Virus record (IMG/VR): IMGVR_UViG_3300010938_000950
Coordinates: 145,767-209,766 of that record
Strand: one strand, 5' to 3'
DNA length: 64,000 bases
Position 1 is the stretch's first letter. The number at the start of each line of letters is the position of its first letter. Below the pieces are notes generated by a model that made no database searches, was not told the DNA's origin, and worked only from the letters and a program-made list of their open reading frames with translations. The position numbers and the translations under genes are program-made. This document shows positions 5,703-63,829 of this stretch, one piece after another.

Positions 5703-5772
5703 AACAGCGAGCCAATTTATTTTGATGTGGGATAGGCACGCACACTGTAATGTAGATGTAGGGAAAGGTAGT

Positions 5773-5795: not shown

Positions 5796-5998
5796 AACGA
5801 TGGGCCAACCACTGCGGCCTGGCGGCCTCCCATTCACGGCAAGCCGGCGGCCGAGGTCGCCGCACCGCAACGCAGACAACGCAAGGTGCATACGAACGGA
5901 TAGCATGTGAGTGGATATGAGCACGGAGGACGGGCTCCCATTCACGGCACGCCAAGCGCCGAAAGCGCAGCGGCTCTCTCAGAAAAGGAAAGACGAAC

Positions 5999-7722: not shown

Positions 7723-7757
7723 CTCCCATTCACGGTCAATCGAAAGCGGAGGATGCG

Positions 7758-7991
7758 ATGGGCTATCTGAACGAGAACGGGCTGGTCAACGGCAACATTC
7801 CAGCAGGCAAGCCTTGTCCCTGGTGGGGCGGATGTAGCATGAAGGTGGAGCGCTGTCCATCGGAGAAGAATCCCAAGCCAGTGGACTACAGTTGTGCCCT
7901 GGCTCGACTCAACAGCACCATCGACTCCAGCAAGAAAGAGGGCAAGCGGTTGCCTTTGCTGGAGAAGGTCCGGGACAACCTGGGAAAGTAA
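7758..7991 (+). CDS. Cys4 protein, paralogue of 24537..24749
   Basis: NGLVNGNIPAGKPCP..C..CP..YSC motif. Confidence 0.7.
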   Translation: MGYLNENGLVNGNIPAGKPCPWWGGCSMKVERCPSEKNPKPVDYSCALARLNSTIDSSKKEGKRLPLLEKVRDNLGK

Positions 7992-8188
7992 TCCTTGGGA
8001 GCAACTTCTAAGAGCAAGCGAGAGCGTTGGAACGAGGTGGTCAAGGAGACGGGCAAGTGTCCCTTCTGTCCACCTCACAACGGAGAGAACGCAAAGAAGC
8101 GTCCTCGGTCTGACAAGTACAAGAGCAAGCGCAAGGGGCGATAGGGCGCGAGGCTCCCATTCACGGCGAGCCGGCAGCGGAGGGCGAC

Positions 8189-10540
8189 ATGGCGAACGTA
8201 CAAGTGACGCTGACTCAGAAAGAGCTGGAGGAGATTGTCTGCCAGCATCGGATTCCCCTCTGGCTGGAGCATCGGTATCTCTGCCATCCCGAGCGAGAGT
8301 GTGAGGATGGGTGTCAGGTTCACGCTGACCTGAACCGACTCCACAAGTACCAAGATGGTCAAGGGTGTGACCCGGCCTATGGTGGTGAAAGGACCAAGTG
8401 AAGATGCGTGCATGCACACACAAGAGGCGAGAGCTTTGCACCGAAGCTGATGGGTGCTACTGGCTTCGGTGTTTGCATTGCAAGGCTCGCGGTCCCAAGA
8501 AGCATAGCGCCACGCTGGCAATCAAGGCCGCCAAGAACAACATGCGAGAGCGCTGATGGCAAGCTGGCAACTGGAAAAAGATCCTGTCAGGTTGTGGAAC
8601 CTGTTGGCGACATGTCTCTCCTACGGCCACACCATTCCCTACTACTACAGGGATAAGCCGCAAACCTCCTTCCCTCTCAACAATCACGAGCACAACTATT
8701 CCGATAGTTCTTGTGCTCCGTATCTGCTGGAGGATATCCAGCATGCTCTCTTCGATGAGGGGATGCCGGAGGTGAGGCTGGTCTTGTGGGGACGGTCTCA
8801 TGGTCCCATCACAGACACCGTGACCTTCACCTTCAACAAGCAAGGTTTGGTCCAAGCCCTGATCTACTACAACGACGACTAAAAGTCGGCGGCTCCCATT
8901 CACCGCAACCAAGCATCGAAGCCCAACGGAGGAACGAATCATGAGCGAGCAAAAGAATCAGGCGAGCAAGTCGCCTGCAAAAGAGCGCAAGATGACTCCC
9001 AAGGGATTCCTTGCCAAGACTCAGACCAAGGCCGCCAACTCGGCCCTTGCCTTCATCACCCAGTACCGTGAGTATCTGACCACGGGAGAGGTGGCAGACA
9101 GGACCAGTCCCATCATCGCCAAGCTGGATGCTGGCGAGCTTCTGCCGACTCCTGCTCTCCGGGAGATTCAGAATGCCGTGATGACTCACATCATCAAGGC
9201 AGACGAGAAGAAGCTGGAAGAGAGCCTGACGGCTCCTGCCAATGGTGGAGGGACTCGCAAGAACTGGCGAGCCACCATCTACGATGCGGCTGGCAACGTC
9301 ATGACTCGGACCAAGGAAAGCGGGGAAGTGGAGGATCTCATCAAGGGGTTCGATCTCTCCTCGGATGCCGACCGCTGGTGTGACCGGCGACTCTTCGAGG
9401 GGACGCATGGTTGGTATGCCATCGTGGAGCATACCAGCATGAAGGTCTCCACCCGAATCGAGCGAGGGGATGCCATCGCCCGGATTCTCAAGAAGCCCAA
9501 GGGGCCGACGGTCCAGGTCAAGGGCAAGAGCACCAAGACCCTGGGCTTCGGAGTCAAGGCCAAGCAAACCCGAGTCACCTTCTCGGGAAGCTGAGAGCCA
9601 ATGGGGAGCGGGGCCAAACACTCCGCTCCCATTCACAACCAATCGAGGACGATGAGCATGACACCGTTCGAGCAAGCGGTTGCCTCCCTGGGCGACACAC
9701 CCGAGTCAGTCACGGAAGCACTCAGGGCCAAGGGCATCAAGGGCTATCGGCGCCTGGCCTCTTCATGCCCGATTGCCAAGTACCTGAATGCATGTGGGTT
9801 CAAGATCGTCACGGTCGCTACCCACGCTCACAATTACCGCCATCCTATGGATGAGTATGCGGAGCAGGCAATCTCTCTGAATAAGGGAGTTAGGGAGTGG
9901 ATCATCGGATTCGATGATGGCAAGTACCCGGAGTTTTACCAGGACGCATGACCATCTCAGCCGAGGATGAGTTTCTGATTCAGGCCACTGGTCCAGGAAA
10001 GGAAGATCGTTCCTGGTCCCGGAGCACCCTGGCAGTAGCTCAACACATCGCAGACCAGGCCATCACCAAACTTGGGTATGCGTATGCAGAAGTGCGCAAC
10101 CAGTTTGGTGGGCATCTGAGTGACCCTCTCTACAAGGTGGAGAAGATTGCTCGGCCTCCGGGAGAACCAACCAACGAGATGCGGCTCTCCATGAAGAGAG
10201 CTGGCATTGACCCGGACGAGTGGCTACAGAAAGCACGAGCCCCTCAATCACACGCTGCCACTCAGCAATTGATTGCTTTGTTGGCAAAGAGGCGATAAGC
10301 CTCCCATTCACAGAATGCCCATTGCAGGGCATGCGGCAAGCAACGAACGAAAGCGAGACAACGAACATGAACGAGCAGCAGACCTTCCAGAGCCCGACCC
10401 GCCTCTTCCTCCTCCGATGCCATGCGGCCTGGGAGAAGTTCGAGAACGTGGTTCTCTTCCCCTTCCGCTGGCTGAGCGCCCGCTTCGGACAGACCCACGT
10501 GTTCGAGGAGCGAGCGGTCCAGCTCCGACTCGTCAAGTAA
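8189..10540 (+). other. Hypothetical ORFs 8189..8401, 8556..8882, 8941..9594, 9652..9951, 9948..10298 and 10367..10540
   Basis: Tightly packed + strand ORFs with SD sites, most preceded by the 11-mer. Confidence 0.7.
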
Positions 10541-10702
10541 GCAAGCCGAGCGGCTCCCATTCACCGCTCACCGCAAGCGGCAAGCGACAGCACAATCGAG
10601 CATCGGGCCTTCCCCGGCCCATGAGCTAACAAGCAATAAGGTACACACGAACGCTCTGCTCACTCGTGCTGTCGCAACCCGCACCTAAGACAAGGAAGAG
10701 TC

Positions 10703-11080
10703 ATGGCCAAGTGTTCACGCTGTCAGGGTGAAGGCGAGGAGTTTACCGAAGAAGAGGGCCACCCACGAGGTGGAGTCTACGAGACCTGCTACCACTGTGG
10801 TGGTTCTGGTGAAGTGGACGAAGAGACCGACTTCCACGACCGACTCCATGCGGTTGCTTCCGCTCTGGCTTACCAGAAGGAAAGCGAGTATCGCAAGGCA
10901 TGTGACTCTGACCCGGATGGGGATGGGTACGACTTGTGTGCAGCGGAGAATGGCTACCGTACTTACGACTACTTCCGAGTCCGTGTTTGGGAACGCACGG
11001 CGGACATTGCCCAAGAGCTGGCCGAAAGGCCGAGGGCAGACCAAGAGCTACTGGTGGCCTGGAACGAATACCAGGGCTGA
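10703..11080 (+). CDS. DnaJ-type CxxCxGxG zinc-finger protein
   Basis: CSRCQGEG and CYHCGGSG motifs. Confidence 0.7.
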   Translation: MAKCSRCQGEGEEFTEEEGHPRGGVYETCYHCGGSGEVDEETDFHDRLHAVASALAYQKESEYRKACDSDPDGDGYDLCAAENGYRTYDYFRVRVWERTADIAQELAERPRADQELLVAWNEYQG

Positions 11081-11115
11081 CGGCTCCCATTCACTGCAAA
11101 CCGAAAGGCAAGGCC

Positions 11116-12772
11116 ATGCTGATTCGCATGTCGTCCATGTTGACGGGCAAGATTCACGAACGAGAGATTGATGTCACTCCTGAGCAACTCCAGAAGTGGC
11201 ATGATGGCATGCTGATTCAGGATGCCATGCCTCATCTGTCGGATGATGACAGAGAGTACCTGATCAGTGGGGCCACTCCCGAAGAGTGGGATCAGTTCTT
11301 CGGGCCTCCCAAGAAAAAGAAGTAAACGAAGTCCTTCCATGCCCGTATCCAATTCCCTTACAGGAATTGGGGCGGGCATAAGGTGTCGAAAGGAAGGACA
11401 ATGTTTCGAGAACAGACAACGTATCCGCTTCACGACACATCACTCTCACCCGATGCGGAGAAGGGGCAGATTGCGCTTCTCCACAACATCGAGAAGCGGT
11501 GTCAGGCCATCGTCACCAAGCTTCCCAAGTGGGGCGGAGGTGTTCAGGTCAAGGTGCTGAAGGAGTACCTCAACAAGCTCCTCAAGGTCAACTTCAACGA
11601 CAACCACATTCGGTATGCACTGGAGTGGCTGGTCAACAACGACTGCATCGGCAAGAGGGGAAAGGGTGACACCGCTCTCTACTACGCCTATGCCACCACC
11701 CCGGCTCGCTGGTCCAAGGCACGCAAGGCTCATCGCCGATGATGACCGAGACTCAGATCGCCTTGGAAGTGGGTCTGATGGGCAGGAGCCGAGCGGTCAG
11801 CTTTCTCCAGTCTCTTCTCTCTCGGTTCCAAGGGAACGTCACTCAGGCCGCGCCCGAGGCTCCCATTCACGGCATGTCGGCCGCCGAGGATGCGGCAACC
11901 GACGAGCAAGCGGTCAAGGACTGGAACAAGCCCGAGCCCAAGACCAGCTTCGACCATGCGGTCAACTTCATCTTCGCTCACCCCGGCTGTCGTAGTGGGG
12001 ATGTGAAGCGTCACGTCAAGGAAGTGGCAGGCATCACGGACAACCAGTGGGCCAACATTCTTGTCAAGCTGGGCAATGACCGGCGCTTCCGCAAGGAAGG
12101 CGAGAAGATCAACATGAAGTGGCACACGGTCTAGCAGACCTCCCATTCACAAATCATCGCAACCTCAGCCCGTACCTGGCGAAAGCTGGGACGGGCTTGA
12201 GGCATTGAAAGGACGGGAGCTATTGCTCCCCATAACAACAGGAGCAATCAAAATGGAAAACGTCAAGATGTCGGTCAACGGAACGAAGCTCACCATCGAG
12301 GTGGATCTGGCGCATCGGGGTGGCAAGTCCCCCTCTGGCAAGACGATCCGAGTCGCCTCCACGGAGGGCAACGTCTCGATTCCGGGGTACGAGAACGCCG
12401 AGGTCAAGGTCGGTCTCAACGTCTTCACCAAGTGAGTGACGTTGCCTACCTTGAAAACAACTAGGTAGGCAGGCATAAGCTGATTCGCTACCTGGCATAT
12501 GCAGGTCGAAAGGCGGACAGCCTGGCTAGTCGTGAAAGCCGGACTCCCATTCACCAGCCACCAGCCAGGAACGAAAGAACATGAACAAGCGAGCCATCGA
12601 AGGTGTCAAGTCCAATCTCCGCTACATCGAGGAGGACGTGGACAGCGCTCTCTCTCACGCCAAGGAGATCAAGGATCCCGAGCTGACCAAGAAGCTGACG
12701 GAGATCAAGGCGAAGACGCAGGGAGCCAAGGAGTACATCGTCAGCCGTACGGACGCCAAGACCACTGGCTGA
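11116..12772 (+). other. Hypothetical ORFs 11116..11325, 11401..11742, 11739..12134 and 12581..12772
   Basis: + strand ORFs; 11401 and 11739 products have wHTH-like C-termini. Confidence 0.65.
12253..12435 (+). CDS. Small conserved protein, paralogue of 1760..1945
   Basis: MENVKMSVNGTKLTIEVDL...SGKTIRVASTEGNVSIPG...KVGLNVF. Confidence 0.8.
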   Translation: MENVKMSVNGTKLTIEVDLAHRGGKSPSGKTIRVASTEGNVSIPGYENAEVKVGLNVFTK

Positions 12773-12956
12773 CCATAGGGGCTGACCGAAGACGAAGGGG
12801 TGGATGAGCAACCCTCCCGGAATGGCGATAATTGGGTAACGTACTCAAGTAAGCAAAGTTGGTGGCTCCAATCTTCGCATCGGCATAAGCCGACTGCAAC
12901 CATCGGGCAAGGCCGATAGGATCTAACCATTCCTCCCTCTGGTAGATTCTGTCCGA

Positions 12957-13048
12957 GGCCGAAACAAGCATACGACACTATATGGGTTTAGCGGTGAGCC
13001 CTGTAGCTAGTATGCTTGTCTAACAGTGAGGCTGTTACTGACGAGCCC
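12957..13048 (+). ncRNA. Type II hammerhead ribozyme candidate (cleavage after GTC 13020)
   Basis: GAAA at 12961, perfect 10-bp stem III ACAAGCATAC/GTATGCTTGT, GUC triplet, 6-bp stem I TAACAG/CTGTTA, CTGACGA core, short stem II G13045-C12960. Confidence 0.7.
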
Positions 13049-13250
13049 AAGTACCTACACGGGTAGCAGACGAAACCATCTGGCTGGTAACCGGGTGGCT
13101 GATAGTAGGGATACACCAAACGAGATGTAAGTTTGGTCCCTTCTGGTCTATAACAATACCTCACCAGAGAGCGGCTGTTGTCCTACAGGATTGCCAAACT
13201 CTGCTTTGTAATCATAATGCCGGGGTCGCTCCCTGAATTGTCTGTAGGTG

Positions 13251-13319
13251 GCATATCCCAAACTGGATGACCAAGCGACTAGCTATCGCAAGGTGTGGGT
13301 TCGATTCCCACGATATGTA
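13251..13319 (+). ncRNA. Degenerate tRNA-like element (anticodon loop CT-AGC-TA)
   Basis: Acceptor GCATATC/GATATGT, T arm GTGGG-TTCGATT-CCCAC, D-loop-like AACTGGAT without a stem, 4-bp anticodon stem. Confidence 0.6.
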
Positions 13320-13459
13320 CTGAGTTACTTGGCGTGAGTCACTGTGAGTCACAACGCATGTCGGGGTCTCGAATCCTTATGCACCGTGATAGCAGGTTCG
13401 ACCCATGGGAATAACGGCCGGGTAGCTCTCAAGCTCCCATTCATCGCAAGAAGGAAACG

Positions 13460-14327
13460 ATGTTCGACTGCAACACTCAGGGAACGTTGACTGTCCAAGG
13501 AATCCCTTGGGCCTACTTGAAGCACAACGGCAAGTTGGCTTTTGGGTTTGGCCGTCATGCCATTCACTTCGTTCCTCAGACCGGCTTCTATCATATCAAG
13601 GAAGCTGGTGAAACTGTCTTCGCTGCATCCACCGTGGCAGAGTGTCTGGACAACGCTACTCCGTTCGTCCTGGACTACTATGCCGACCGCATCAAACCGT
13701 CCTGGGAGAACTGAAGGAACATGCAAACGACCATCGACACCGCCGATGCCAAGAAGAAGCTCTACAGCACCAACCTCGGAGAGTACCACATCAACGAGTT
13801 TTGTCGAGTGCTGTCCATCCGGCTTCCCGAGCAGATCACTCCGCTCGGCTTTCTGATGGCCTTCGAGCTTCTCATCTCCGACATGGAGAAGGGTGACGGG
13901 CTCTACATCAAGGGCATCGGGGAGCCCATTCGCTCCCGATTGTCCAGCATGCCGCTGGGCTTTCTGATGAGGCTTCACATCGACAAGATCATCGACCAAG
14001 CATTCCCTGCGGAGTTTGGTGCCGAGATCAAGGCCGAACGTCAGGCCGTACTGAACGACATGAAGGCGTCCGGTTTCTGAACCGGCTCCCATTCACTGCA
14101 ACGAACGAGGAACGAACATGGCAACCGTCAACCGCACACCGAGCAGCAAGCCCCGTCAGCCCAGTGTCAGGGAGCTGACCAAGATCAACCGCAAGCTCAA
14201 GCGCCAGGTTCAGAAGGAGAACAAGCGCAACGAGGAGATCAACCGTCTCCGCAAGGAGAACGAGGAGCTGAGCCTCCGTCTCTACTCACTCCGCAACGAG
14301 CGCAACAACACCGGGGAGTGCTGCTGA
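13460..14327 (+). other. Hypothetical ORFs 13460..13714, 13721..14080 and 14118..14327
   Basis: SD-preceded ORFs; 14118 is a basic coiled coil. Confidence 0.7.
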
Positions 14328-14504
14328 GATGAGCACTCCGAAGACCAAGCGAGTCAATGCTCGCAAGTTCCCCGGCATCGCTGGTGCCCGGCCCGACAAG
14401 GCGGCTTGGCGCAAGGAAGCTGCTCTCAAGCGGCAAGCGGCCTACGCTGCTCTTCCCGAGGAAGAGAAGAAGCGCCGCAATCCCAAGAAGTTCGAGAAGG
14501 CGGC

Positions 14505-14630
14505 ATGAAGCTCTCACTTCGGAAGCAGAGGGGATTCACCCTGACCGAGCTTCTGGTCGGCCTCTTCTGGCTCCTCTTCTGGGGCACTCTCATCGTGGTG
14601 GCCGTTCACTTCATCGCCAAGTTCTGGTGA
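14505..14630 (+). CDS. 41-aa type IV prepilin-like peptide
   Basis: MKLSLRKQRG|FTLTELLVGLFWLLFWGTLIVVAVHFIAKFW: basic leader, G-1, F+1, E+5 and one hydrophobic helix. Confidence 0.75.
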   Translation: MKLSLRKQRGFTLTELLVGLFWLLFWGTLIVVAVHFIAKFW

Positions 14631-14634
14631 TAGA

Positions 14635-15165
14635 ATGAGCTGCGATAACTGCAACTGTCTGGACTGTACCAGGCAGCGAGGCATCGACCGAGCCATGAAT
14701 CGGTCCAACGACATGGACGATGCTCCCATTCACGGCCTGCGGTGGCAGGATGCCGAGCCGGCCAACGAAGTGCAGGCCAAGGCATGGGGAACCATCGCTG
14801 ATCACTTCATCGACCACATCGTCTCCATGCCGCTGTCACGACTGGTGGAAGCGGTCTGCAATTCCATCAGGGGACTCAAGCCTGAGAACTACAATCGGGT
14901 GGCAGCTCAGGTGGAGAGATTCATCAGGGAGAGCCCCAAGTACGAGCTTCGTAAGGGTATGGCTGGTGGAGTCTTCAAGCGCAAACCAGCGGGCGGGTCG
15001 GATCTGAGTTTCGTCCAGCCCGTCTACATGGAGCTGAAGCCGGCTACCAACGTACCGGACATGATCACTGGGAAACTTCCCGACGACCACACGTGTCCTG
15101 CATGTGGCAACACCAAGCTGAACAAGGCAGAGAAGTCTTGTTGGAAGTGTGGAGGTGCGCTGTGA
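14635..15165 (+). CDS. Hypothetical protein with C-terminal zinc ribbon
   Basis: CPACG...CWKCG; in-frame 11-mer (DDAPIHG). Confidence 0.7.
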   Translation: MSCDNCNCLDCTRQRGIDRAMNRSNDMDDAPIHGLRWQDAEPANEVQAKAWGTIADHFIDHIVSMPLSRLVEAVCNSIRGLKPENYNRVAAQVERFIRESPKYELRKGMAGGVFKRKPAGGSDLSFVQPVYMELKPATNVPDMITGKLPDDHTCPACGNTKLNKAEKSCWKCGGAL

Positions 15166-15431
15166 GCTTCAAGGACAGAGACGAGACTCCCGAGGAAAAG
15201 AAGAAGCGGGAGTTTAGCGAGAATCCCAAGAACTTCCCTGCCATCACGGTGAGATACTGCCATCAGTGCGGGTGTCACTATACTGGTGGGTGCAAGGAGC
15301 ATGCTTCTGCACTTCAATCTGACTTGAAGTTGAAGCAGTAACCAAGGACGAACGGCGCTCCCATTCACGGGGCGGCGGTGACGAAAACCGGGCAATCGCC
15401 CCAAACAAGAAAGAAACAGGAGAATCGAATC

Positions 15432-15884
15432 ATGGCATGGGACAACACGCCCGCTCAGAAGGAAGCGGTCAAGGCGTTTCTGGTTCAGACGGATGGCAAG
15501 TACGACCTGGAGGCCAGCGTGGAGAAGTTCACGGCGGTCGCCAAGTTGCACATCGCCAAGCAGACGGCAGAGCAGGATCTGATCGCTCTCTGCATGGCCG
15601 AGGTCTTCGATGCCCGTCCGGGTGTCACCCTCAACATCGACTACATCAAGAGCCAGACGGTGGCTCGGATGTCGAAGCGTCACCCGGAGTTGGGTGAGCC
15701 GACCCTCTTCTCCATGCTGAGTGGTCGAGTGGAGGACTACCTCCACGAGAACTGCGACCAGCCGGCGGTGGAGGCCAAGGGTGACAAGCCCGCTCGTGAG
15801 GCCATCACGGATCGCACCTACGCCAAGAAGATGGGCAAGGGTGGCGGGTTCTACCGCAAGTCGGACCAGACCCCGAGCAAGTGA
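15432..15884 (+). CDS. Putative DNA-binding protein, paralogue of 33228..33656
   Basis: VQTDGKYDL and KMGKGGGFYRKSD motifs; AGGAG SD. Confidence 0.75.
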   Translation: MAWDNTPAQKEAVKAFLVQTDGKYDLEASVEKFTAVAKLHIAKQTAEQDLIALCMAEVFDARPGVTLNIDYIKSQTVARMSKRHPELGEPTLFSMLSGRVEDYLHENCDQPAVEAKGDKPAREAITDRTYAKKMGKGGGFYRKSDQTPSK

Positions 15885-16229
15885 TCATGGCAGAGCAGCC
15901 GGTCGATCTGAGCCCCTTCCTCAAGAGGGGGCTCCACTACCGGGTGGCGGACTTTCTGTACCGCCATCTCTTCCAGCATGTGGACAACTTGCTGGAGCGT
16001 CTCAGTGCATGGTCCACTCGCAAGTGGTGCGAGGACAACAGCCAAGCGCTGCGCGACCTGAATCGAAAGGGTCGCTGACAAGGAATCGGGTTTGGTGTAA
16101 GAGTCTAGCCCTTGGCATCGGACCAAGGGAGGACGAACCCAAGAGCACACAAAACACCTATGCTGCCAGGGCGATAGCGATTCAAACTGGTAGCTCCCAT
16201 TCACCGCAACCGCAACCCGAGGAACAACG

Positions 16230-18320
16230 ATGAGCAACCGCGCTACCAACATCCTGCTTCGCCACAACTTCATCCACATCCCTGCTCCGAGCAGCGATAC
16301 GGTGGTGGGTGCCAAGGAAGCTCTTGCCACCATCCTGATGAACCTGACCTACTACGGGAAGGCTCTCAGCCAGGAGGCATATGCCAAGCTCCTTCACCTG
16401 ACGGGTGATGACTTGGTGTCCTGGTGGCAGGTTGTCGAGGCTGAGCTGAAGGACATCACGGGAGCCTCTCGCAAGATTGGCGATTTCGTGGTCTACAAAA
16501 ACTTCCCCAAGGAGGTTCTGGACAAGAGCGCGGCCGAATACTGGCTCCCGCAGATCCTCATGTACTGGGGATTCCCGAAGGAGCTGTTCACCGAAGAGGT
16601 GGTGCCCCGTCCGAAGATGGACGAGCAGCCCAAGTGTACGGTGCTTCATCTCGCCAAGGATGGTCAGCTCCAAAACATCTTCACGTCCTACCTCAAGTCC
16701 CCGGCTCGCTGGAAGGACCATGAGCTGGCTGACGTTCTCTTCCTGGTGGATTGGTTTGCCGTCGATCTCGGCAAGCTGGCCTTCAAGGAGAACATGGTTC
16801 TCCTGGCTTCGGCTCTCATCAGCCGTGGCAAGGACATCAAGGTCAACACGGCCACCGACGTTCTCCGTCTGGCTGTTGGTCTCAGCAACGGTGATGTCTC
16901 TCTCCGTGAGAAGAGCAAGCTCCGTTCCTTCAAGAAGAAGGAACGTCGATTCCTGCTCAACATGCTGGAGAGCTGCACCAATCTGACGGAGGACGTGGCT
17001 CGTAGGCCCGAGCTGTTCAAGCGTCTTCTCCACTCTCTTCACCCCGGCGACTACAAGCGGTCCTATCCGCAAGTCCTCAAGGTGATGAACAGTCTCTATC
17101 ATGACGAGTTGGAGACTTTCAACTCTCAGGTGGAGGGCCTTCTGCTCGACAAGGACGAGCGAGTGCTGAAGCTTCTGGCTGGTCGCCCTGGCGACTTCCG
17201 AAGGCGCCTGGTCCACACGGTCAATCTCTTCGGTAAGAAGGCGGCTTCTGCCTTCACTTCTCAGGAAGTGCTGAGCAAGCTGACGGTCGGGCAGATCGTG
17301 GCTACTCGTTCCTTCCTGAACACGGTCAACGAGCGTACGGCTCGCATCTTCCCGCCCAAGGGGAACTGGAGTCGTGCTCAGTTGGCAGAGCCCCGCACGG
17401 TTGCCAAGACTCATCTCAAGGCCATCGACAAGGCGCTCGGTGCTGCGCTGGCTGCACGTGTTCCGGCAGTTGGTGTGCTCGATCCTGCCACCAGCAAGAT
17501 CAAGCTGCCCAACAACGGAGAGGAAGGTCCCTACACTCGTGGAACGGTCTTCCCGATTCCCGAGGGAACGGACTTCATCCGCACGGCATCCTATTGGGAT
17601 GTCAGCCAGTCTCGCTACACCTGGTTCGACAATGGTTGGAACTTCTTCGACCAGAACTGGAACCCGGTTGGTGCTTGCTGTTGGAACCAGCCCTTCTTCC
17701 CCAGCCGAGGGTACAGCTACTACAGCCGAGATCAGAAGCCTGCCAAGGATACTGGAGCGGTCTTCTCTGGAGACCCGACCATTGCCACTGGTAAGGCTGC
17801 CCAGATGATCGACCTGTATCCCGAGAAGCTTCGTGCTCAGGGAGTCAGGTATGCCGTGTGGAGCGTTCTCTGCTTCTCTCGGTTGACGTTCAACCAGGCG
17901 AACGATGTCTTCGCTGCCTTCCAGTGGGGCAAGGATGCCAACAAGGGCAAGCTTTTCGAGCCGGCCCGTTGTCAGCTTGCCATCCCGCTCAAGGGTGACC
18001 AGCTCACCAAGTACGTCGTTCTCATCGACCTCGATAAGAACGAGATGATCTACTTGGATGCTGGCCTCAAGAGCAGCACCAGCAGCGCAGCCATGAACGG
18101 CCCTCTTCTCCAGAAGACGATGCCGGCGTTCTTGGAGTACATCAACTCCCTCCCCTCCGTTCACGACTTGTTCCGTGAATCGGTGGACGCATCCAGCAAG
18201 ACCAAGATTCTCTACTCCGACAAGGATGCAGAGTTGAAGGGTGAGCCGGCCTATGTTTTCCGCCCGGAGAACAAGGAGAACAAGTTCAAGCCGGTGGACC
18301 TGAACGGTCTTCTCGGATGA
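16230..18320 (+). CDS. Large TerD-domain family protein of the type carried by large phages and Firmicutes
   Basis: 696 aa; family motifs TATDVLRLAVGLSNGDVSL, SFKKKERR, LHPGDY, RPGDFRRRL, IFPPKG, RGT..P, SGD, FEP in a TerD-like C-terminal region (recognised from memory). Confidence 0.75.
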   Translation: MSNRATNILLRHNFIHIPAPSSDTVVGAKEALATILMNLTYYGKALSQEAYAKLLHLTGDDLVSWWQVVEAELKDITGASRKIGDFVVYKNFPKEVLDKSAAEYWLPQILMYWGFPKELFTEEVVPRPKMDEQPKCTVLHLAKDGQLQNIFTSYLKSPARWKDHELADVLFLVDWFAVDLGKLAFKENMVLLASALISRGKDIKVNTATDVLRLAVGLSNGDVSLREKSKLRSFKKKERRFLLNMLESCTNLTEDVARRPELFKRLLHSLHPGDYKRSYPQVLKVMNSLYHDELETFNSQVEGLLLDKDERVLKLLAGRPGDFRRRLVHTVNLFGKKAASAFTSQEVLSKLTVGQIVATRSFLNTVNERTARIFPPKGNWSRAQLAEPRTVAKTHLKAIDKALGAALAARVPAVGVLDPATSKIKLPNNGEEGPYTRGTVFPIPEGTDFIRTASYWDVSQSRYTWFDNGWNFFDQNWNPVGACCWNQPFFPSRGYSYYSRDQKPAKDTGAVFSGDPTIATGKAAQMIDLYPEKLRAQGVRYAVWSVLCFSRLTFNQANDVFAAFQWGKDANKGKLFEPARCQLAIPLKGDQLTKYVVLIDLDKNEMIYLDAGLKSSTSSAAMNGPLLQKTMPAFLEYINSLPSVHDLFRESVDASSKTKILYSDKDAELKGEPAYVFRPENKENKFKPVDLNGLLG

Positions 18321-50910: not shown

Positions 50911-51402
50911 ATGCCATATAAAAACATTGAAGACCGTCGAGAATGCCTTCGTAAATATCGTAATGAGAACCGCGAGAAGATACGTGAACAAACACGTAAA
51001 CAATCCTTAGCTTGGCAAAAGGCGCATCCTGAAGCCGGGCAAAAATGGAAAGAAGAAAACGCCGAGAAAATCAAAAAGATTGGTCGCAAATCCAATCTCA
51101 AAAAAGTTGGCTGGACAATAGAGGAATTCGATTCAGCGTTTGAAAAACAAAAACAATCCTGTTGGATATGTGGCGTTGAACTTACCAAAGAGAAGGGTTT
51201 TGGTAATACTGCCCATGCAGATCATAATCATACAACGGGTAAAAAGCGTGGTATTCTTTGCACTAAGTGCAATCTAATAGAAGGGCACATGAATAAATGT
51301 GCGATACCACCAAAAGAATTTCTCGAAAAACTTTTAGAATACTATAAGGTATTCGATACGGAAGGTAATCAAGATGAACTTCATGGCATGGCCGGAGATT
51401 GA
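50911..51402 (+). CDS. Free-standing endonuclease VII-like homing endonuclease
   Basis: QKQSCWICG...HADHNHTTGKKRGILCTKCNLIEG; basic N-terminal region; overlaps the RNA ligase start. Confidence 0.85.
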   Translation: MPYKNIEDRRECLRKYRNENREKIREQTRKQSLAWQKAHPEAGQKWKEENAEKIKKIGRKSNLKKVGWTIEEFDSAFEKQKQSCWICGVELTKEKGFGNTAHADHNHTTGKKRGILCTKCNLIEGHMNKCAIPPKEFLEKLLEYYKVFDTEGNQDELHGMAGD

Positions 51403-52375
51403 ATCGTTCCATAACATCAGGAAATATACTTCACCAGCCGCTCATCCTGAAATCTTGAACGGCAATACTATTGTCGATTATAGACCCAAGGTTAAGTTGC
51501 ATGGTACGAATGCGGCTGTTCAAGTCCATGAGGATGGAAGCATTGTGTGTCAGAGTCGCGAGTCTATTATCACCCGTGAAAAAGACAATGCTGGCTTTGC
51601 TAAGTGGGCACACTCCCAACCTAATTGGGATCTAGCCAAAGGCCATATTCTCTATGGCGAGTGGTGTGGACCTGGTATTCAGAAGGGTGTTGCCATTGCC
51701 CAAATTCCTCGCAAGGTGTTCGCTATCTTTGCAGCGCGTCCTTTGGATGGCAGCGACAAATTGATTGTTGAACCGGACGAGCTTCGTGTTTTGATCGAGA
51801 ATACTAAGTTCAATATTCCTGACGTGTATGTTCTTCCCTGGTACAACGAAGGGCTGGAAGTTGATTGGTCTGAGACAAGTGAAGAGCTAACCAAGGATGT
51901 TAATCTAATCAACGAGTGGGTTAGTGCTGTGGAAGCTAATGATCCATGGGTCGAAGCGACCTTCAATGTCAAGGGGACTGGAGAAGGTTTGGTTTTCTAT
52001 CCTCGTTCAGATGAACATCTCGGCTTCACTAACTTCAATAACTTGGTATTCAAAGCCAAGGGAGAAAAGCATAAGAACATTGCCACGGCTAAGCCTGCGC
52101 AAGTGGATGCAACTGCGGCGGCCAGCATCGATGCGTTCGTGGCTATGGTTCTTACCGAAGCTCGTCTGGAGCAAGGTGCTACCAAGGTGTCTGCTGATGG
52201 TGCACTTACCTATGACATGAAGAACACAGGTAAGTTCGTCTCCTGGGTAAGTGCAGATGTAGAGAAAGAAACTCAGGATGAGCTAGCCGCCAGCAATCTC
52301 ACCTTCAAACAGGTGCAGAAAGCCATCAGTGATAAGGCTCGTGCCTGGTATCTTGCCAAAGCTAAGGAGCTATAA
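51374..52375 (+). CDS. RNA ligase (Rnl2 family)
   Basis: KLHGTN, YGEWCGPGIQKG, FAIF, EGLV and FKAK nucleotidyltransferase motifs. Confidence 0.88.
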   Translation: MNFMAWPEIESFHNIRKYTSPAAHPEILNGNTIVDYRPKVKLHGTNAAVQVHEDGSIVCQSRESIITREKDNAGFAKWAHSQPNWDLAKGHILYGEWCGPGIQKGVAIAQIPRKVFAIFAARPLDGSDKLIVEPDELRVLIENTKFNIPDVYVLPWYNEGLEVDWSETSEELTKDVNLINEWVSAVEANDPWVEATFNVKGTGEGLVFYPRSDEHLGFTNFNNLVFKAKGEKHKNIATAKPAQVDATAAASIDAFVAMVLTEARLEQGATKVSADGALTYDMKNTGKFVSWVSADVEKETQDELAASNLTFKQVQKAISDKARAWYLAKAKEL

Positions 52376-57448: not shown

Positions 57449-57787
57449 ATGAGTATGGATACAATTACGTTTGACGATTTCGTCAAAGCAGACATGCGTG
57501 TAGGTACAATCACCTCTGCGGAGGCTGTGCCCAAGAGCAAGAAGCTTCTCAAACTTTCTGTCTCATTCGGTCCTGAGATTGGTACTCGCACTATTCTTGC
57601 AGGTATTGCCGAAGCCTACAATCCAGAAGGCATTGTTGGACTTCAGATTGTTGCAGTAATCAACCTTCCGCCCCGAGCTATGATGGGTATCGAGTCTCAT
57701 GGTATGCTTCTAGCTGGCAGGTCTGCAACTGGTCAACTCATTCTCGTCTCTCCTAATGGTATTGCCGAGGGAGAGCGAATCGGCTGA
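57449..57787 (+). CDS. Trbp111/CsaA-type OB-fold tRNA-binding protein
   Basis: FDDFVKADMRVGTI...KLLKL...RTILAGI...NLPPRAMMGIESHGMLL. Confidence 0.9.
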   Translation: MSMDTITFDDFVKADMRVGTITSAEAVPKSKKLLKLSVSFGPEIGTRTILAGIAEAYNPEGIVGLQIVAVINLPPRAMMGIESHGMLLAGRSATGQLILVSPNGIAEGERIG

Positions 57788-59168
57788 GAGGCGCGGCCTC
57801 CCATTCACGGGAGGCCGTTGCAAAAGGAAGCGCCCATGATTAGGTTGAGAACCAAAGTAGGAAATGGTAGAGTTTTTACTCTCTACTTCATGGGTAAATG
57901 GGTAACTCTCATCAATGATGGTACCAGAGCTTCTTCTGTTGATGCAGACAACCTGATGATGGCAGGAGCTAACCATCTGGCAGCCGCTACAAAACTCAAG
58001 GAGATTATGGATGACAGAGGAAGATTTGCTGAACAGCTACTTCACAGAGAAAGATATTCCGGGAGTCTCAGCTCAGGAGTTTCAGACGGCAGTGATGGGG
58101 CTAATCGAGAAGGGTCTCATCGAGATGGTGGAAGCGAACGGGATCAAAATCTACCGCCCAACTCTTCTTCTGAAGAAAATCAAAACACATCTGAACTCGG
58201 ATCCCAAAACGCAGAGTTAAATGATGGACAAGAAAGAGTTTGAAGAAAAGCTAATCAAAGACTTTCCTGGCCTCTATGCTGATATGTATGGTGATGCCAG
58301 TAAGACTTGTATGGCCTGGGGAGTAGAAATTGGACCAGGATGGTATGATCTGGTTTATGATCTCTCCGCTAAGTTAAACGCCATTATTCAAACCTTTCCA
58401 AAAGAATACGCCCAGAATTTTAGGTTCTCCCAGATAAAAGAAAAGTTGGGCGGCCTGCGTATTCATATGACAAAAACCTCGCCCGAGATGAGAGAACTTA
58501 TTCATAAGGCCGAGTCTGATAGTTATCATATTTGCCATCGTTGTGGACAACCTGGTAAATTAGTAAAAGCTAGTTGGCTCTATACATCCTGTAAAGAGCA
58601 CGCTAAACAAGAACACAAAAACCAATTCTGAGGAAAAATGAGCAACAAGAATTTGCCCCTGGACGAGCAGCTTTTCACCGCCGAACACTTTGCGCCCCTT
58701 CCAGGAGCAGTGCTTGGCCTACAGTTCAAGGATGTGACGCTGAAGGGAAAGGTTGGGGACTTCGAGTCCGGAACCAAGTTCTCTTATGCGGTCCTCCTGG
58801 GTGATGCGTCTGCCCTGGTCCTGATCGATGAGAAACAGGAGGAACACGCATTCCGCCTGAGTGTGAGTGTGGGTGAGCGCATCGATGCGGCCGAGCTTCA
58901 TGAGCCTCATGATGAGAGCTGTGATTGCGGCCACGATCACTGACAATGAAATGGATTGTTTCTTGGCAAACAGTGGTTCATCATAGTGATGGTACATGGT
59001 TTGAAAAAACTGAAAGGCACCATCACTCAAAAGAGTTTGATGATAAAGAAGAGGCATACCAATTCAGAAATGATTTGAGGAATGCAAGATATGTTGTAAA
59101 TGTTGAGCTTAAAAGAGAAGTATCTTTAGACGATATTTACAATGCAATCGCAGCCAAAAACTAAGACC

Positions 59169-59200
59169 TATATGCATACACAGACGTGTGTATGCATATA
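59169..59200. repeat. Perfect 14-bp inverted repeat
   Basis: TATATGCATACACA-GACG-TGTGTATGCATATA directly after a stop codon. Confidence 0.85.
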
Positions 59201-59700
59201 GAGCTAACGAGTACGGTTAGCTTTCGTTCTAGCGGATCGCAATGAAACTAGAACGGGTCAAGGGGACTAACATGCTGCCCCTAAGCTTGCGTATGCGAGC
59301 CGCATGAGGTTGCCAACTAACCATAAATGTTGGGGCGCAGGTGGTCACGCCTATACCTACCCCAGTTCTTGTTCATTATTACTGCGTCTTAATAATGTTC
59401 TTTAGTCAACTCTACAACGACCGAGAGAAAACTGTAGACATCCTTGCTAGCCTTCAGATGTATGTGAACAGCTAGGGGCACTCCTGCCCATACCTGCGAG
59501 CGTGAGTTTTCGCTTCCGTTTTGAGTACGATACACATAGGCGTGTGCTTAGATACGAACTTGCAAGCGTATCGGTGCAGGCGCCTATAAAACGGAGGATC
59601 AATTTTATTGGAGAGTGTATTGGGCACTTGAGCGCCTCATGACGAAGATGGAGATAGTCATGACACCCACTGTAAGACCGTGGTGTATAACGGTCTGAAC
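59201..59700 (+). ncRNA. Candidate large structured non-coding RNA upstream of tRNA-Glu
   Basis: About 500 nt with no ORF of 60 aa or more on either strand and many stem-loops (GAGCTAAC/GTTAGCTT, CGTTCTAG/CTAGAACG, CATTATT/AATAATG, GATACG/CGTATC, AGACCG/CGGTCT). Confidence 0.5.
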
Positions 59701-59701
59701 T

Positions 59702-59776
59702 GGCCCCATCATCTAGTGGTTAGGATATATGGCCTTCACCCATAGTACAGGGGTTCGAATCCCCTTGGGGTCACCA
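59702..59776 (+). tRNA. tRNA-Glu(TTC)
   Basis: Full cloverleaf GGCCCCA...TGGGGTC-A-CCA, D loop AGTGGTTAGG, TATGG-CCTTCAC-CCATA, AGGGG-TTCGAAT-CCCCT; C at position 33. Confidence 0.92.
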
Positions 59777-60982
59777 TGAAAGAAAAGAAAGAAAAATGTA
59801 AGCACCCGAAAATTCCTTCCTATGAATTGGAAGAGCAAGAAGCAGCCAATACTTTGATTGATCAAATCAATCGTGGTGATGTGGTCGCTTATGGATCTCT
59901 TTGTAGATTGGCTGTCTCTGTTGTTAGAGACGGCAGATTCTATCGTGAAACTTGTGAGAAATGTCATGGACTCAGTTCCTCTACAGAAAATTCAGAAGAA
60001 AGCTGAAGCGTATGATTCTACACTTCTCGCTACTGATCCGCGATTTCGCAGAGTTGTGATCCTTGAGCATGAGGACGGTTCTTATCTACAATTCGATAGC
60101 GCATTTTTGATGCGTGTAGATAGAGAGTGGATTGTATGCTTTACAGAACACCATGGTTTTCATGTGTATCATGCTGACGACCTATTTGCATATTCTCAAT
60201 ATGAAAGGTTGAATGTATTGGAGGAGCTTCCATGATTGATGTTGAGGCTACATACAAAAACATTCGTACTCTTTACCAAACGGTTTCTGGTAAGGGCGAT
60301 GCAGATGTTTCTGTTACGTACAAGGGCACTAGTTACGGTGTAACTAAATCATGGCATGCCAAAGTGGACGCGCGCGAGATCAATCATGAGACTCATGATG
60401 GTGCCTTGACTGGCTTGTTAGCTCTACTCAAAAAAGAACTAGCCGATAAGACCAAGTCAGCAGAAAATGAAGCTGCCCGTTTGCGCTCAGCTCTCAACCA
60501 ATTGGGGAACTAATATGATTCGTATCAGATACTCTGATAATAACATCGGGGAATATAAGAACGTGGATGTGGCGAACTTCATGGCTCTTAATACTATGTT
60601 CTCTACATCTGGTAAAATCATTCCCATTGAGGCTGTAGAGGTCATTGGGGTGACTACTGGTGGAGTTTCGGTGGAACGTATCCTCAAGATTAAGCTTGGG
60701 GTTATTGAATACGACTGAGGGGCACGGATTCAAAGTTTAATGAGCCCGCACTTGCCCGCCATATAGCCGCCCTAGGAGCATATACGCACATGAGAAAGAT
60801 TCAAGATGCCGATGTAGTCGGTAAGACAATCAAGTCAATCGATAATGGTTCTGTCAACGTTCTTCGTTTGACATTTACAGATGGCACTAGTCTGGAACTA
60901 TGGGCGGAAGATGCCGTCTATACCCCAATGGGTAATATTCCAGGCATCTTTGTGGAAGATTCCACACCGCAAGAAGGTTAAT

Positions 60983-62689: not shown

Positions 62690-63829
62690 ATGACTGACTG
62701 GAATCCCCAAATTGTTCGAATTGAAAAGGTAGAGAAGCATCCGTATGCAGATGCATTGGATATTGCTACCGTGCTCGGGGACTATCCGGTCATCGTCAAA
62801 CGAGATGAATATAAAGAAGGCGATCTAGCTGGCTATATTCCCATCGATTCTATTGTTCCTGATACAGAGCAATTCCATTTTCTATGTCCTAAGATTACTG
62901 AGAAGTATGAAGAGGTTGAGGACAACGAGATTGTAACTAAGACTCGTACGCTCGGCCCTAAGTTCCCAGTTGGTTCTGTTCCTGAGAAAAATCGTATCAT
63001 TAAAGCAAAGAAAATTCGTGGAATCTATTCGCAAGGAATGCTCGTTTCTATCCAGAGCCTTCCATTGGTTCCTGCCGGAGATATGAAAATCCTAGGATGG
63101 TTTAATCCTGGCGATACAATTACAGAGCTTCTTGGACTCAAAAAATGGGAAGAGGAAGAAGAGGAAAATCTTCCTGGTCTTAAAAAGACCGGCCGCAATA
63201 ATGAGAAAGCACCTCAAGGATGGTCTATTCCTCATTATGATATTGACTCAGTGCGCAAGGTAGTTCGTCTTCTTCAGCCCGGAGAAGAGATTGTTCTTAC
63301 TGAAAAGATTCATGGTTCCAATGCCGGATTCTCACATGATGGCACACGCCTATGGGTAAAGTCTCGTAACTTCTATAAGAAGCAAGATGAAGAAGATATG
63401 TGGTGGGATATTGCTATCCGCTACGAATTGGAGAAGAAGCTTTCTCAATATCCTGGTCTTGTTTTCTTTGGGGAAGTTTACGGTCAAGTAAAAAAATTCC
63501 GATACGATACTGTTATCGAAGGCGGGCGTCTGCTCACACGTATACGTTTCTTTGATGTATGGGATACTAAGAAGGGACGATACGTTGACTATGATGATCG
63601 TATTAAGATCATTACAGATGCTGGTCTGGATACCGTTCCAGAGTTGTACCGTGGTCCATGGCTTGGAAAGGAACAAATGTATCCTTTTGCTGAGGGCTTG
63701 ACAACCCTAGGTGGCAAACATATTCGTGAAGGTTGGGTTCTCAACACCGTCAAAGAAAGGTTTGAGCCCGAACTAAATTCCCGTATGCAAGTAAAGTTGG
63801 TGGGGGAAGGTTATAACCTTCAGAAGTAA
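62690..63829 (+). CDS. RNA ligase, DRB0094 family
   Basis: N-terminal HPYADAL/KIRGIYSQG OB-like region; EKIHGSN, FGEVYG, FFDV, REGWV and KLV motifs. Confidence 0.9.
   Translation: MTDWNPQIVRIEKVEKHPYADALDIATVLGDYPVIVKRDEYKEGDLAGYIPIDSIVPDTEQFHFLCPKITEKYEEVEDNEIVTKTRTLGPKFPVGSVPEKNRIIKAKKIRGIYSQGMLVSIQSLPLVPAGDMKILGWFNPGDTITELLGLKKWEEEEEENLPGLKKTGRNNEKAPQGWSIPHYDIDSVRKVVRLLQPGEEIVLTEKIHGSNAGFSHDGTRLWVKSRNFYKKQDEEDMWWDIAIRYELEKKLSQYPGLVFFGEVYGQVKKFRYDTVIEGGRLLTRIRFFDVWDTKKGRYVDYDDRIKIITDAGLDTVPELYRGPWLGKEQMYPFAEGLTTLGGKHIREGWVLNTVKERFEPELNSRMQVKLVGEGYNLQK

What the first reader, a model, noticed from the sequence alone, without database searches (positions are those of the whole stretch)
59169..59776. 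~500-nt structured RNA candidate abutting a tRNA-Glu with C33
Seen: a perfect 14-bp inverted repeat, then about 500 nt with at least ten stem-loops and long-range complements (TTCCGTT 59513 / AACGGAG 59590), ending 1-2 nt before the tRNA 5' end. The tRNA has C instead of the near-universal U33. Established: large phage ncRNAs such as GOLLD and ROOL lie next to tRNA genes. I see no RNase P or tmRNA signature. Inference: a possibly new large ncRNA released by RNase P. The anticodon-loop substitution may evade a host anticodon nuclease.
Basis: partly seen in the sequence, partly recalled or inferred. Interest (0 to 1): 0.62.

Follow-up and report, generated by a model that had tools for sequence, protein, structure and literature searches.

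The report
New large structured RNA beside phage tRNA-Glu
A giant soil phage carries a gene for a previously uncatalogued, intricately folded RNA of about 450-545 bases just upstream of an unusual glutamate tRNA; it resembles in kind, but not in sequence or fold, the mysterious large phage RNAs ROOL and GOLLD.

Summary
Window 59157-59701 (+ strand) is a conserved, non-coding, highly structured RNA, followed at once by tRNA-Glu(UUC) with C at position 33. I found 16 distinct homologues, all in one narrow clade of uncultivated soil or rhizosphere megaphages (contigs of 340-500 kb). On their alignment, 127 proposed base pairs are 94.9% canonical. Forty-eight pairs change on both sides, against 27 +/- 2.7 in shuffles and 8-13 in slid controls. 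G.U cells outnumber A.C cells 250 to 29, which fixes the + strand. All three frames are full of stops.

No Rfam 15 family matches, even at E<=10 and in eight further homologous loci. This includes GOLLD, ROOL, RNase P, tmRNA and group I/II introns.

The element is modular:
- an optional module of about 98 nt (59604-59701).

In two relatives the core abuts tRNA base 1. One relative keeps the core but has lost the tRNA.

C33 is invariant in 15 homologous tRNAs, but it also occurs sporadically in other phages and in cellular genomes. Expression, RNase P release and nuclease evasion remain untested inferences.

The parts
59157..59170 (+). 5' leader motif (window AAACUAAGACCUAU; family consensus AGACUUAGACUUAC). 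It starts at or overlaps the stop codon of whichever ORF lies upstream.
   Evidence: It is conserved in all 16 homologues. The exact consensus core was found at most once in any fetched locus (15 loci), and wherever I located it, it lay just upstream of the RNA. It does not recur in the window.
59159..59163 (+). Leader half 1. It pairs with 59403-59407 in a long-range helix that encloses the 5' two thirds of the RNA.
   Evidence: helix 1: 88.8% paired, and 3 of 5 pairs change on both sides (G-C/A-U with G.U intermediates; U-A/A-U). Per-sequence listing.
59165..59169 (+). Leader half 2. It pairs with GGGUC at 59255-59259.
   Evidence: helix 2: 100% paired in 16 sequences. L038 has a compensated C-G to U-A change, and L015 a U.G to U-A change. 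The rival partner ACCC (59491-59494) is broken in L015 and L038.
59168..59201 (+).
   Evidence: A hairpin of different sequence sits at the same place in nearly all homologues. helices 3-4: 8 of 9 pairs change on both sides. Sequences.
59201..59223 (+). Hairpin H1 (8 bp; loop nAGUACn with invariant GUAC).
   Evidence: helix 5: 100% paired; the A-U/G-C switch is split 8:8.
59228..59252 (+). Hairpin H2. Most homologues have an inner CCUG/CAGG stem capped by CGCAA.
   Evidence: helix 6: 5 of 10 pairs change on both sides.
59260..59312 (+). Variable peripheral domain of two hairpins. It is missing in L025, different in L015 and L035, and enlarged in L038.
   Evidence: Alignments. helices 7-8.
59313..59361 (+). 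Hairpins H5 (59313-59317 with 59329-59333) and H6 (59340-59345 with 59355-59361).
   Evidence: helices 9-10: 3 double-change pairs each.
59362..59397 (+). H-type pseudoknot. Stem 1 is 59362-59365 with 59382-59386. Stem 2 is 59374-59381 with 59390-59397.
   Evidence: helices 11-13: 5 pairs change on both sides. Pair matrix. MAFFT misplaces one bulge, so stem 2 is undercounted.
59411..59438 (+). Hairpin H8, with invariant ACCGA in its loop.
   Evidence: helix 14: 100% paired, and all 5 pairs change on both sides.
59443..59603 (+). 3' domain, the most conserved part (87% mean column identity). It has six nested helices and ends ...GGAUCAAU.
   Evidence: Alignment. helices 15-21. Model R1 finds one copy in the window's record and one in a complete 480-kb relative.
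59557..59566 (+). Loop AACUUGCAAG of hairpin 59551-59572. It contains the 8-nt palindrome CUUGCAAG and is invariant while its stem covaries.
   Evidence: invariant columns. helix 21 (3 double-change pairs in the stem).
59604..59701 (+). Module B, an optional accessory RNA: a three-way junction plus a terminal hairpin. It stays attached to the tRNA.
   Evidence: It is conserved in 13 homologues. Stems 59634-59639/59657-59662 and 59673-59679/59688-59694 covary. It is absent in L043, L046 and L025, and an ORF separates it from the core in L033 and L035.
59702..59776 (+). tRNA-Glu, anticodon UUC (59735-59737), C32 59733, C33 59734.
   Evidence: The loop CCUUCAC is invariant in 15 homologues, with compensatory changes in the acceptor, anticodon and T stems.

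Best explanation
SHOWN. Window 59157-59603 (+) is a free-standing gene for a non-coding RNA of about 445 nt, with a conserved and elaborate fold.
- A two-part 5' leader clamps onto two distant GGUC segments.
- About a dozen hairpins, one H-type pseudoknot and a near-invariant 3' domain follow.
- In most relatives a conserved accessory module of about 98 nt (59604-59701) comes next, then tRNA-Glu(UUC) with C33.
- The family is confined to one clade of soil megaphages and matches no catalogued RNA family.

INFERRED.
- All genes here run the same way with almost no spacers, and no sigma-70-like promoter lies in front. The RNA is therefore probably cut out of a long transcript.
- Host RNase P, in maturing the tRNA 5' end, makes the 3' end of the RNA. 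This end follows the core directly in L043 and L046, and follows module B in the window.
- The core keeps its sequence where the tRNA is lost (L025) or moved away by an ORF (L033, L035). It therefore acts on its own, in trans, as a folded RNA and not as a tRNA leader.

MOST LIKELY MODE OF ACTION (my commitment, weakest step). It is a stable scaffold RNA of the ROOL/GOLLD kind. It binds copies of itself, through the invariant palindromic loop CUUGCAAG, and/or a phage or host partner of the translation or RNA-repair machinery. The neighbourhood encodes a tRNA-binding-domain protein and two RNA ligases.

THE tRNA. It is a working, selected Glu tRNA. Its fixed C33 is most simply an anticodon-loop variant kept because it changes recognition by some host factor, such as an anticodon nuclease.
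For: Structure is real:
- 16 distinct homologues; 127 pairs are 94.9% canonical.
- 48 pairs change on both sides, against 27.2 +/- 2.7 in shuffles (0/500) and 8-13 in slid controls.
- Covariation score is 0.270 against 0.143.

Strand: 250 G.U cells against 29 A.C cells; 94.9% canonical on +, 83.9% if read on -.

Non-coding: 4-16 stops in every frame of every homologue, and indels that are not multiples of 3.

Not a known family: only the tRNA is found in the window at gathering score, in 58900-60000 at E<=10, and in 8 homologous loci at E<=1.

Boundaries:
- The leader motif matched at most once in any locus, always in front of the RNA where checked.
- Leader helices are documented.
- The core ends at GGAUCAAU, directly before tRNA G1, in L043 and L046.

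Autonomy of the core:
- L025 has the core only.
- L033 and L035 have an ORF of 88 or 210 aa, with no Pfam family above threshold, between the core and module B.

Copy number: one copy per genome.

Context: PF01588 tRNA_bind at 57449-57787, in conserved synteny in every locus. RNA ligases at 51374-52375 and 62690-63829.

Precedent: palindromic loops make the symmetric kissing contacts of OLE, GOLLD and ROOL multimers, and those RNAs lie near tRNAs (bioRxiv 10.1101/2024.12.08.627333).

tRNA: C33 is invariant while the stems covary.
Against: - No transcript evidence: no RNA run was listed, so the 5' and 3' ends, stability and abundance are unknown.
- Folding energy of the core alone is only modestly better than shuffles (z = -2.15).
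- Where an ORF follows the core (L033, L035), RNase P cannot make its 3' end, so processing there must differ.
- The homologues are closely related (78% mean column identity). Shuffle tests therefore overstate significance somewhat; the slid controls are the fairer comparison.
- The palindromic loop is invariant, so intermolecular pairing cannot be tested by covariation. It could instead be a protein site, or a 2-bp stem extension with a UGCA loop.
- Linkage to the tRNA-binding protein and the ligases is plain synteny within a fully collinear region.
- C33 is not special to this phage, and U33C does not block gamma-toxin.
Confidence: 0.55

Rival explanations
1. The whole 545 nt is a cis-acting 5' leader of the tRNA. 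It would be a structured precursor segment that controls transcription, RNase P access or the timing of tRNA-Glu maturation, and would have no role once cut off.
For: It lies directly upstream of the tRNA in 14 of 17 arrangements seen. Module B always travels with the tRNA when the two parts are split. No separate promoter or terminator is visible.
Against: L025 keeps the core, with helices and invariant loops intact, after losing module B and the tRNA. In L033 and L035 an ORF lies between the core and the tRNA. A leader would not need about 445 nt with a pseudoknot and near-invariant loops. This rival remains plausible for module B alone.
Confidence: 0.12
2. The RNA is the scaffold of a ribonucleoprotein with phage proteins encoded nearby (the PF01588 tRNA-binding-domain protein, the RNA ligases, or unknown small proteins). 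Its conserved loops would be protein sites, not RNA-RNA contacts.
For: The tRNA_bind gene is conserved about 1.4 kb upstream in every locus. There are two RNA ligase genes in the window. The related invariant loop sequences AACUUGCAAG (core) and ACUUGAGC (module B) could be two sites for one binder.
Against: The whole region is collinear in all relatives, so linkage is not specific. No protein partner is fused, overlapping or co-varying in presence. ROOL and GOLLD, the nearest analogues, assemble without protein. This overlaps with the best explanation and does not exclude it.
Confidence: 0.18
3. It is a self-splicing intron, another ribozyme, or the RNA of a mobile element or guide system (group I/II intron, HEARO or omega RNA, retron msr/msd).
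For: The size and the pseudoknot are compatible with a ribozyme. ORFs are inserted at the core/module B junction in two relatives, as happens with intron-borne endonucleases.
Against: No intron, ribozyme or omega RNA model matches even at E<=10. There is no interrupted host gene: the tRNA is intact and the upstream ORFs end with their own stops. The inserted ORFs match no endonuclease, reverse transcriptase or transposase family. There is one copy per genome, always at the same syntenic site. No relative's syntenic region contains IscB, TnpB or RT genes.
Confidence: 0.05
4. It is not an RNA gene at all but a DNA-level signal (replication origin, packaging site, attachment site next to a tRNA) or a small-protein gene.
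For: The record is classed as a provirus. In two records the element lies about 4 kb from the contig end. Phage attachment sites often sit at tRNA genes.
Against: Pairing is strand-specific: 250 G.U against 29 A.C cells. Compensatory changes preserve RNA helices, including long-range ones. There are stops in all frames. Phage genes in conserved order continue on both sides in contigs of up to 128 kb. No repeat array was noticed in the region on reading the sequence and alignments; the repeat finder was not run.
Confidence: 0.03

Closest known systems
ROOL RNA (Rfam RF03087)
   Same: A large, ornate, pseudoknotted non-coding RNA of phages and prophages, often beside tRNA genes, with no known protein partner or function. 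Highly conserved palindromic loops mediate self-assembly.
   Different: No match to the ROOL covariance model at any threshold tried. This RNA is shorter (core about 445 nt), has a different helix layout, and is restricted to one clade of soil megaphages. Self-assembly is untested here.
GOLLD RNA (Rfam RF01998)
   Same: A phage-encoded large structured RNA next to, or even enclosing, tRNAs. It has a strongly conserved 3' region and a more variable 5' region, as seen here.
   Different: No match to the GOLLD model. This RNA is about half the size. Its sequence and fold are unrelated.
Phage tRNAs with anticodon-loop substitutions that escape host tRNA nucleases (eLife 2023, PMC10264068; retron evasion by phage tRNAs, PMC11555353)
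   Same: A phage-encoded tRNA carrying a fixed, unusual anticodon-loop base, in a genome region with RNA ligase genes.
   Different: The host and its tRNA-Glu are unknown, so 'differs from the host tRNA' cannot be checked. No nuclease that targets tRNA-Glu at position 33 is identified. Gamma-toxin is indifferent to U33C (PMC2275089).
Candidate structured RNAs catalogued from IMG/VR intergenic regions (PMC10690425)
   Same: Same data source (IMG/VR) and same kind of evidence (covariation in phage intergenic regions).
   Different: I could not check whether this element is among the 8,495 candidates, because no supplementary files are held. That paper excludes nothing about it and assigns no function. 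It used IMG/VR v3.

Membership tests
ROOL (RF03087) | Scores at or above the family's covariance-model threshold | tested here: not met
   No match at gathering score, at E<=10 in 58900-60000, or at E<=1 in 8 homologous loci.
ROOL (RF03087) | Phage or prophage location near tRNA genes | tested here: met
   Megaphage contigs; tRNA-Glu lies 0-98 nt downstream.
ROOL / GOLLD | RNA-only homo-multimeric cage | not testable with these tools
   Only an invariant palindromic loop (59559-59566) hints at self-pairing.
GOLLD (RF01998) | Scores at or above the family's covariance-model threshold | tested here: not met
Group I intron (RF00028) / group II intron (RF00029) | Covariance-model match, and interruption of a host gene whose exons rejoin | tested here: not met
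   No model match. The tRNA is intact and the upstream ORFs are complete. In L043 and L046 the core abuts tRNA base 1.
RNase P RNA / tmRNA | Covariance-model or ARAGORN match | tested here: not met
tRNA (RF00005), Glu isoacceptor | Cloverleaf model match and UUC anticodon | tested here: met
   57.6 bits against a gathering score of 29. ARAGORN calls Glu(ttc). 15 homologues have compensatory stem changes.
tRNA (RF00005), Glu isoacceptor | U at position 33 (near-universal, not defining) | tested here: not met
   C at 59734, invariant in 15 homologues.
Nuclease-evading phage tRNA variants | The anticodon loop differs from the host's cognate tRNA, and the variant resists the host nuclease | not testable with these tools
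   Host unknown: no match to the core RNA's 3'-domain pattern in 185,579 species genomes. No cleavage assay is possible.

The most novel reading that the evidence does not exclude
The core RNA would be a third, independent class of self-assembling phage RNA after ROOL and GOLLD. It would multimerise through its invariant palindromic loop (CUUGCAAG) into an RNA-only particle. That particle would act on tRNAs, ribosomes or RNA-repair enzymes during megaphage infection. Alternatively, it could be a new ribozyme acting on the adjoining tRNA precursor.
Probability: 0.2. Interest if true: 0.85.

Novelty: new variant of a known kind. Interest (0 to 1): 0.68.

Why it matters
Large RNAs with conserved, complex folds are rare. 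Each class found so far (ribosome, RNase P, introns, OLE, ROOL, GOLLD) has turned out to be a machine or an assembly.

This is a compact, well-delimited new family with unusually clean comparative support. Its modular architecture has already been dissected by natural variants: core alone, core plus tRNA, and core/ORF/module B/tRNA. It is short enough for in vitro transcription and cryo-EM.

It lies next to a tRNA, as ROOL and GOLLD do, in a region with RNA ligases and a tRNA-binding protein. It therefore offers another handle on the open question of what tRNA-linked giant phage RNAs do.

The fixed C33 in a selected elongator tRNA-Glu recurs in unrelated phages and in some cellular genomes. 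This is a smaller, separate lead on anticodon-loop variation in phage-host conflict.

Tried and rejected
- Rfam at gathering and permissive thresholds, on the window and on 8 homologous loci: only the tRNA.
- BLAST of the region against 50,697 GenBank phages: only a tRNA-level match to IAS virus, whose tRNA-Glu has the normal U33.
- Distant relatives found through the two flanking proteins (L003-L024): no RNA, no tRNA-Glu and no comparable gene-free gap.
- Profile HMMs of the core and of module B against 108 loci holding other phage tRNA-Glu genes: nothing.
- Pattern scan of 185,579 species genomes for the core's 3' domain: 0, so no host or prophage copy was found.
- Leader motif as a general phage promoter: rejected. 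It does not recur in the window, and it matched at most once in any locus.
- RNAalifold's helices GGGU/ACCC and leader half 2 with 59397-59401: replaced by leader half 2 with GGGUC, which is 100% paired and compensated.
- GUAC in the H1 loop kissing GUAC in the 59523-59535 bulge: not supported. Variants in L029, L035 and L049 are uncompensated.
- Leader pairing with the 3' end of module B: not conserved.
- Inserted ORFs as homing endonucleases: no family match.
- Expression: no RNA run was listed.
- Supplementary tables of the IMG/VR structured-RNA catalogue are not held.

Full report
WHERE THE WINDOW LIES. The window is the last 64 kb of a 209,766-base IMG/VR virus record, classed as a provirus and estimated to be half complete. 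The protein encoded just upstream of the finding also occurs on a contig of 490,849 bases. The closest relatives are contigs of 340-500 kb. This is therefore an uncultivated megaphage. Around the finding all genes are short, tightly packed and on the + strand.

THE OBSERVATION. ARAGORN and Rfam agree on a single tRNA in the window: tRNA-Glu(UUC) at 59702-59776.
- Its anticodon loop reads CCUUCAC, so position 33 (59734) is C.
- The inverted repeat is 15 perfect pairs (59168-59182 with 59187-59201) around GACG.
- The 537 nt between the upstream stop codon and the tRNA hold no ORF longer than 51 codons.
- They fold to -187.6 kcal/mol, z = -4.45 against dinucleotide shuffles; the opposite strand gives -3.81.
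- Without the perfect hairpin the core gives only z = -2.15, and the last 98 nt give z = -1.40. Folding energy alone would be weak evidence.

HOMOLOGUES. GenBank phages hold nothing similar except a tRNA-level match.
- One flanking protein led to L015 (79% identical RNA region) and a sequence pattern from the RNA led to L025.
- The 101-aa protein encoded directly upstream has 18 relatives in metagenomes. Fetching their contigs gave loci L029-L043.
- A degenerate pattern from the 3' domain added L044-L051 from JGI metagenomes. The same pattern found nothing in 185,579 species genomes and only the two known contigs in IMG/VR.
- In total there are 16 distinct sequences of the RNA, with 78% mean column identity.
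- More distant phages that share the neighbouring proteins lack the RNA.
- The family is thus real but phylogenetically narrow.

STRUCTURE. I tested a 127-pair structure on the 16-sequence alignment A6. It came from RNAalifold and was corrected by per-sequence inspection. Results:
- 94.9% of cells are canonical pairs, against 87.6 +/- 0.4 in shuffles and 33-42% in slid controls.
- 48 pairs change on both sides, against 27.2 +/- 2.7 in shuffles (0 of 500 reach 48) and 8-13 in slid controls.
- The covariation score is 0.270 against 0.143.

G.U cells outnumber A.C cells 250 to 29. The same pairs read on the opposite strand would be only 83.9% canonical. The RNA is therefore the + strand. Every frame of every homologue carries 4-16 stops.

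ANATOMY (window coordinates).
- Leader. The consensus AGACUUAGACUUAC corresponds to window 59157-59170. It begins at the stop codon of whichever ORF lies upstream, matched at most once in any locus and is not a recurring promoter motif.
- Leader half 1 (59159-59163) pairs with 59403-59407.
- Leader half 2 (59165-59169) pairs with 59255-59259. That helix is 100% paired, and L038 changes C-G to U-A.
- Hairpin P0. It belongs to the RNA and is not a terminator.
- In order after P0: H1, H2, a variable two-hairpin domain (59260-59312), H5, H6, an H-type pseudoknot (59362-59397) and H8.
- 3' domain (59443-59603), with 87% column identity.
- Invariant unpaired elements: a 13-nt bulge containing GAGUACGA, and the loop AACUUGCAAG (59557-59566). 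That loop's stem covaries at three pairs while the loop never changes. The loop contains an 8-nt palindrome.

MODULARITY.
- The core ends at ...GGAUCAAU (59603).
- In L043 and L046 tRNA base 1 follows immediately.
- In the window and ten other sequences (eleven in all), a conserved 98-nt module B (59604-59701) lies in between. It is a three-way junction plus a hairpin, and two of its stems covary.
- In L033 and L035 an ORF (88 and 210 aa, no Pfam family above threshold) separates the core from module B plus tRNA.
- In L025 module B, the tRNA and two to three genes are deleted, yet the core is intact.
- A covariance model of the 3' domain finds exactly one copy in the window's record and one in the complete 480,838-base relative.

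WHAT IT IS NOT.
- No Rfam 15 family matches in the window at gathering score, in 58900-60000 at E<=10, or in eight homologous loci at E<=1. This covers GOLLD, ROOL, OLE, raiA, RNase P, tmRNA, 6S, Y RNA, group I/II introns, HEARO and the small ribozymes. Only the tRNA is found.
- There is no interrupted gene, and no reverse transcriptase, transposase or endonuclease nearby. Intron and mobile-element readings therefore fail.
- Strand-specific covariation rules out a purely DNA-level signal.

HOW IT PROBABLY WORKS.
- Shown: a conserved, autonomous, non-coding fold on the + strand, always at one syntenic site.
- Inferred: co-transcription with its neighbours, since no sigma-70-like promoter or terminator brackets it.
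- Inferred: its 3' end is made by RNase P at the tRNA 5' end. This follows from the established role of RNase P and from the direct abutment in L043 and L046.
- Inferred: action in trans, because the core survives loss or displacement of the tRNA.
- Mode of action: the nearest precedents are ROOL and GOLLD. They are also phage RNAs near tRNAs, and they assemble without protein into cages partly through conserved palindromic kissing loops. The invariant CUUGCAAG loop fits that pattern but cannot be tested by covariation.
- Neighbourhood: a PF01588 tRNA-binding-domain protein (57449-57787, syntenic in every locus) and two PF09414 RNA ligases (51374-52375 and 62690-63829). This suggests a link with tRNA or RNA-repair biology, but the linkage is not specific.

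THE tRNA.
- Fifteen homologous tRNAs keep CCUUCAC exactly, while the acceptor, anticodon and T stems change by compensation. The tRNA is therefore functional, and C33 is selected or at least tolerated.
- From my own knowledge of E. coli tRNA-Glu identity elements, it has U11-A24, U13.G22 and a 4-nt variable loop, but G2.U71 in place of U2-A71.
- C33 is not unique. The same loop at the same distance from a T-loop occurs in 29 IMG/VR contigs. Twenty of the 28 others are ARAGORN tRNA-Glu; many are jumbo-sized and unrelated.
- 22 of 80 sampled hits in cellular genomes are also tRNA-Glu with C33.
- None of the other phage loci carries the large RNA.
- The idea that phage tRNAs escape host nucleases through loop changes is published (PMC10264068). 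That paper does not mention position 33 or Glu. K. lactis gamma-toxin cuts a U33C Glu stem-loop normally (PMC2275089). The evasion reading is plausible but unsupported here.

LIMITS.
- No RNA-seq run was listed, so expression, ends and abundance are unknown.
- The homologues are close relatives, so shuffle statistics are generous.
- MAFFT misplaces one bulge in pseudoknot stem 2 and shifts one strand of a module B stem, so those helices are undercounted.
- I could not check the IMG/VR candidate-RNA catalogue of PMC10690425.

VERDICT. It is a new family within the known kind 'large ornate phage RNAs beside tRNAs'. Its function is unknown.

Noticed in passing
window 51374-52375 and 62690-63829: Two proteins of the PF09414 RNA-ligase family. 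The second also has a PHA02142 OB-fold domain. In T4 such enzymes repair tRNAs cut by anticodon nucleases, so they may relate to the unusual tRNA. No Pnkp-like partner turned up among the ORFs I scanned.
   Followed up: partly
window 57449-57787: A 112-aa protein that is essentially a bare PF01588 tRNA-binding domain (E 2e-22). It is conserved about 1.4 kb upstream of the RNA in every homologous locus.
   Followed up: partly
L052-L079 (IMG/VR) and L201-L280 (species genomes): tRNA-Glu(UUC) genes with C33 recur in about 20 unrelated IMG/VR contigs, many of them jumbo-sized. They also occur in at least 22 cellular genomes, including Clostridia MAGs, Hungatella hathewayi, Acidithiobacillus and Asgard archaea. 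I did not check whether the cellular copies lie in prophages.
   Followed up: partly
window 59604-59701: Module B is a conserved small structured RNA in its own right (three-way junction plus hairpin). Its loop ACUUGAGC resembles the invariant core loop AACUUGCAAG, which may mean two sites for one partner.
   Followed up: partly
window 59776-60006: In the window the next ORF starts with an ATG whose A is the last base of the tRNA's encoded CCA. In L015 a GGAG ribosome-binding site and ATG follow the tRNA instead. The tRNA is embedded in a translated operon.
   Followed up: no
L016 and L017, 2145-2217: Other megaphages found through the DUF7227 protein carry a tRNA with anticodon CUA (an amber suppressor, labelled tRNA-Pyl by ARAGORN). 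L013 has a UCA-anticodon tRNA. These hint at stop-codon reassignment or suppression in those phages.
   Followed up: no
window 1-17000 versus 40000-64000: G+C falls from 0.65 at the window start to about 0.42-0.48 at its end, while GC skew stays positive. The record is classed as a provirus, so the high-GC part may be a different module or host-derived.
   Followed up: no
window 58946-59164; L031 3278-3478; L036 3281-3445: Different small ORFs are inserted between the conserved 101-aa gene and the RNA in different relatives. The RNA's leader motif always starts right at the stop codon of whichever ORF comes last.
   Followed up: partly
G000 205206-205370 of 209766; G001 477060-477221 of 480838: In two independent records the RNA lies only about 4 kb from the contig end. 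This could be an assembly break, the provirus trimming point, or a real genome feature.
   Followed up: no
L200 (NC_049978.1 2609-2680): The table of annotated features lists the IAS virus tRNAs on the strand opposite to the one on which ARAGORN finds them in the same locus. This is probably an orientation quirk of the display. That tRNA-Glu has the normal U33.
   Followed up: no
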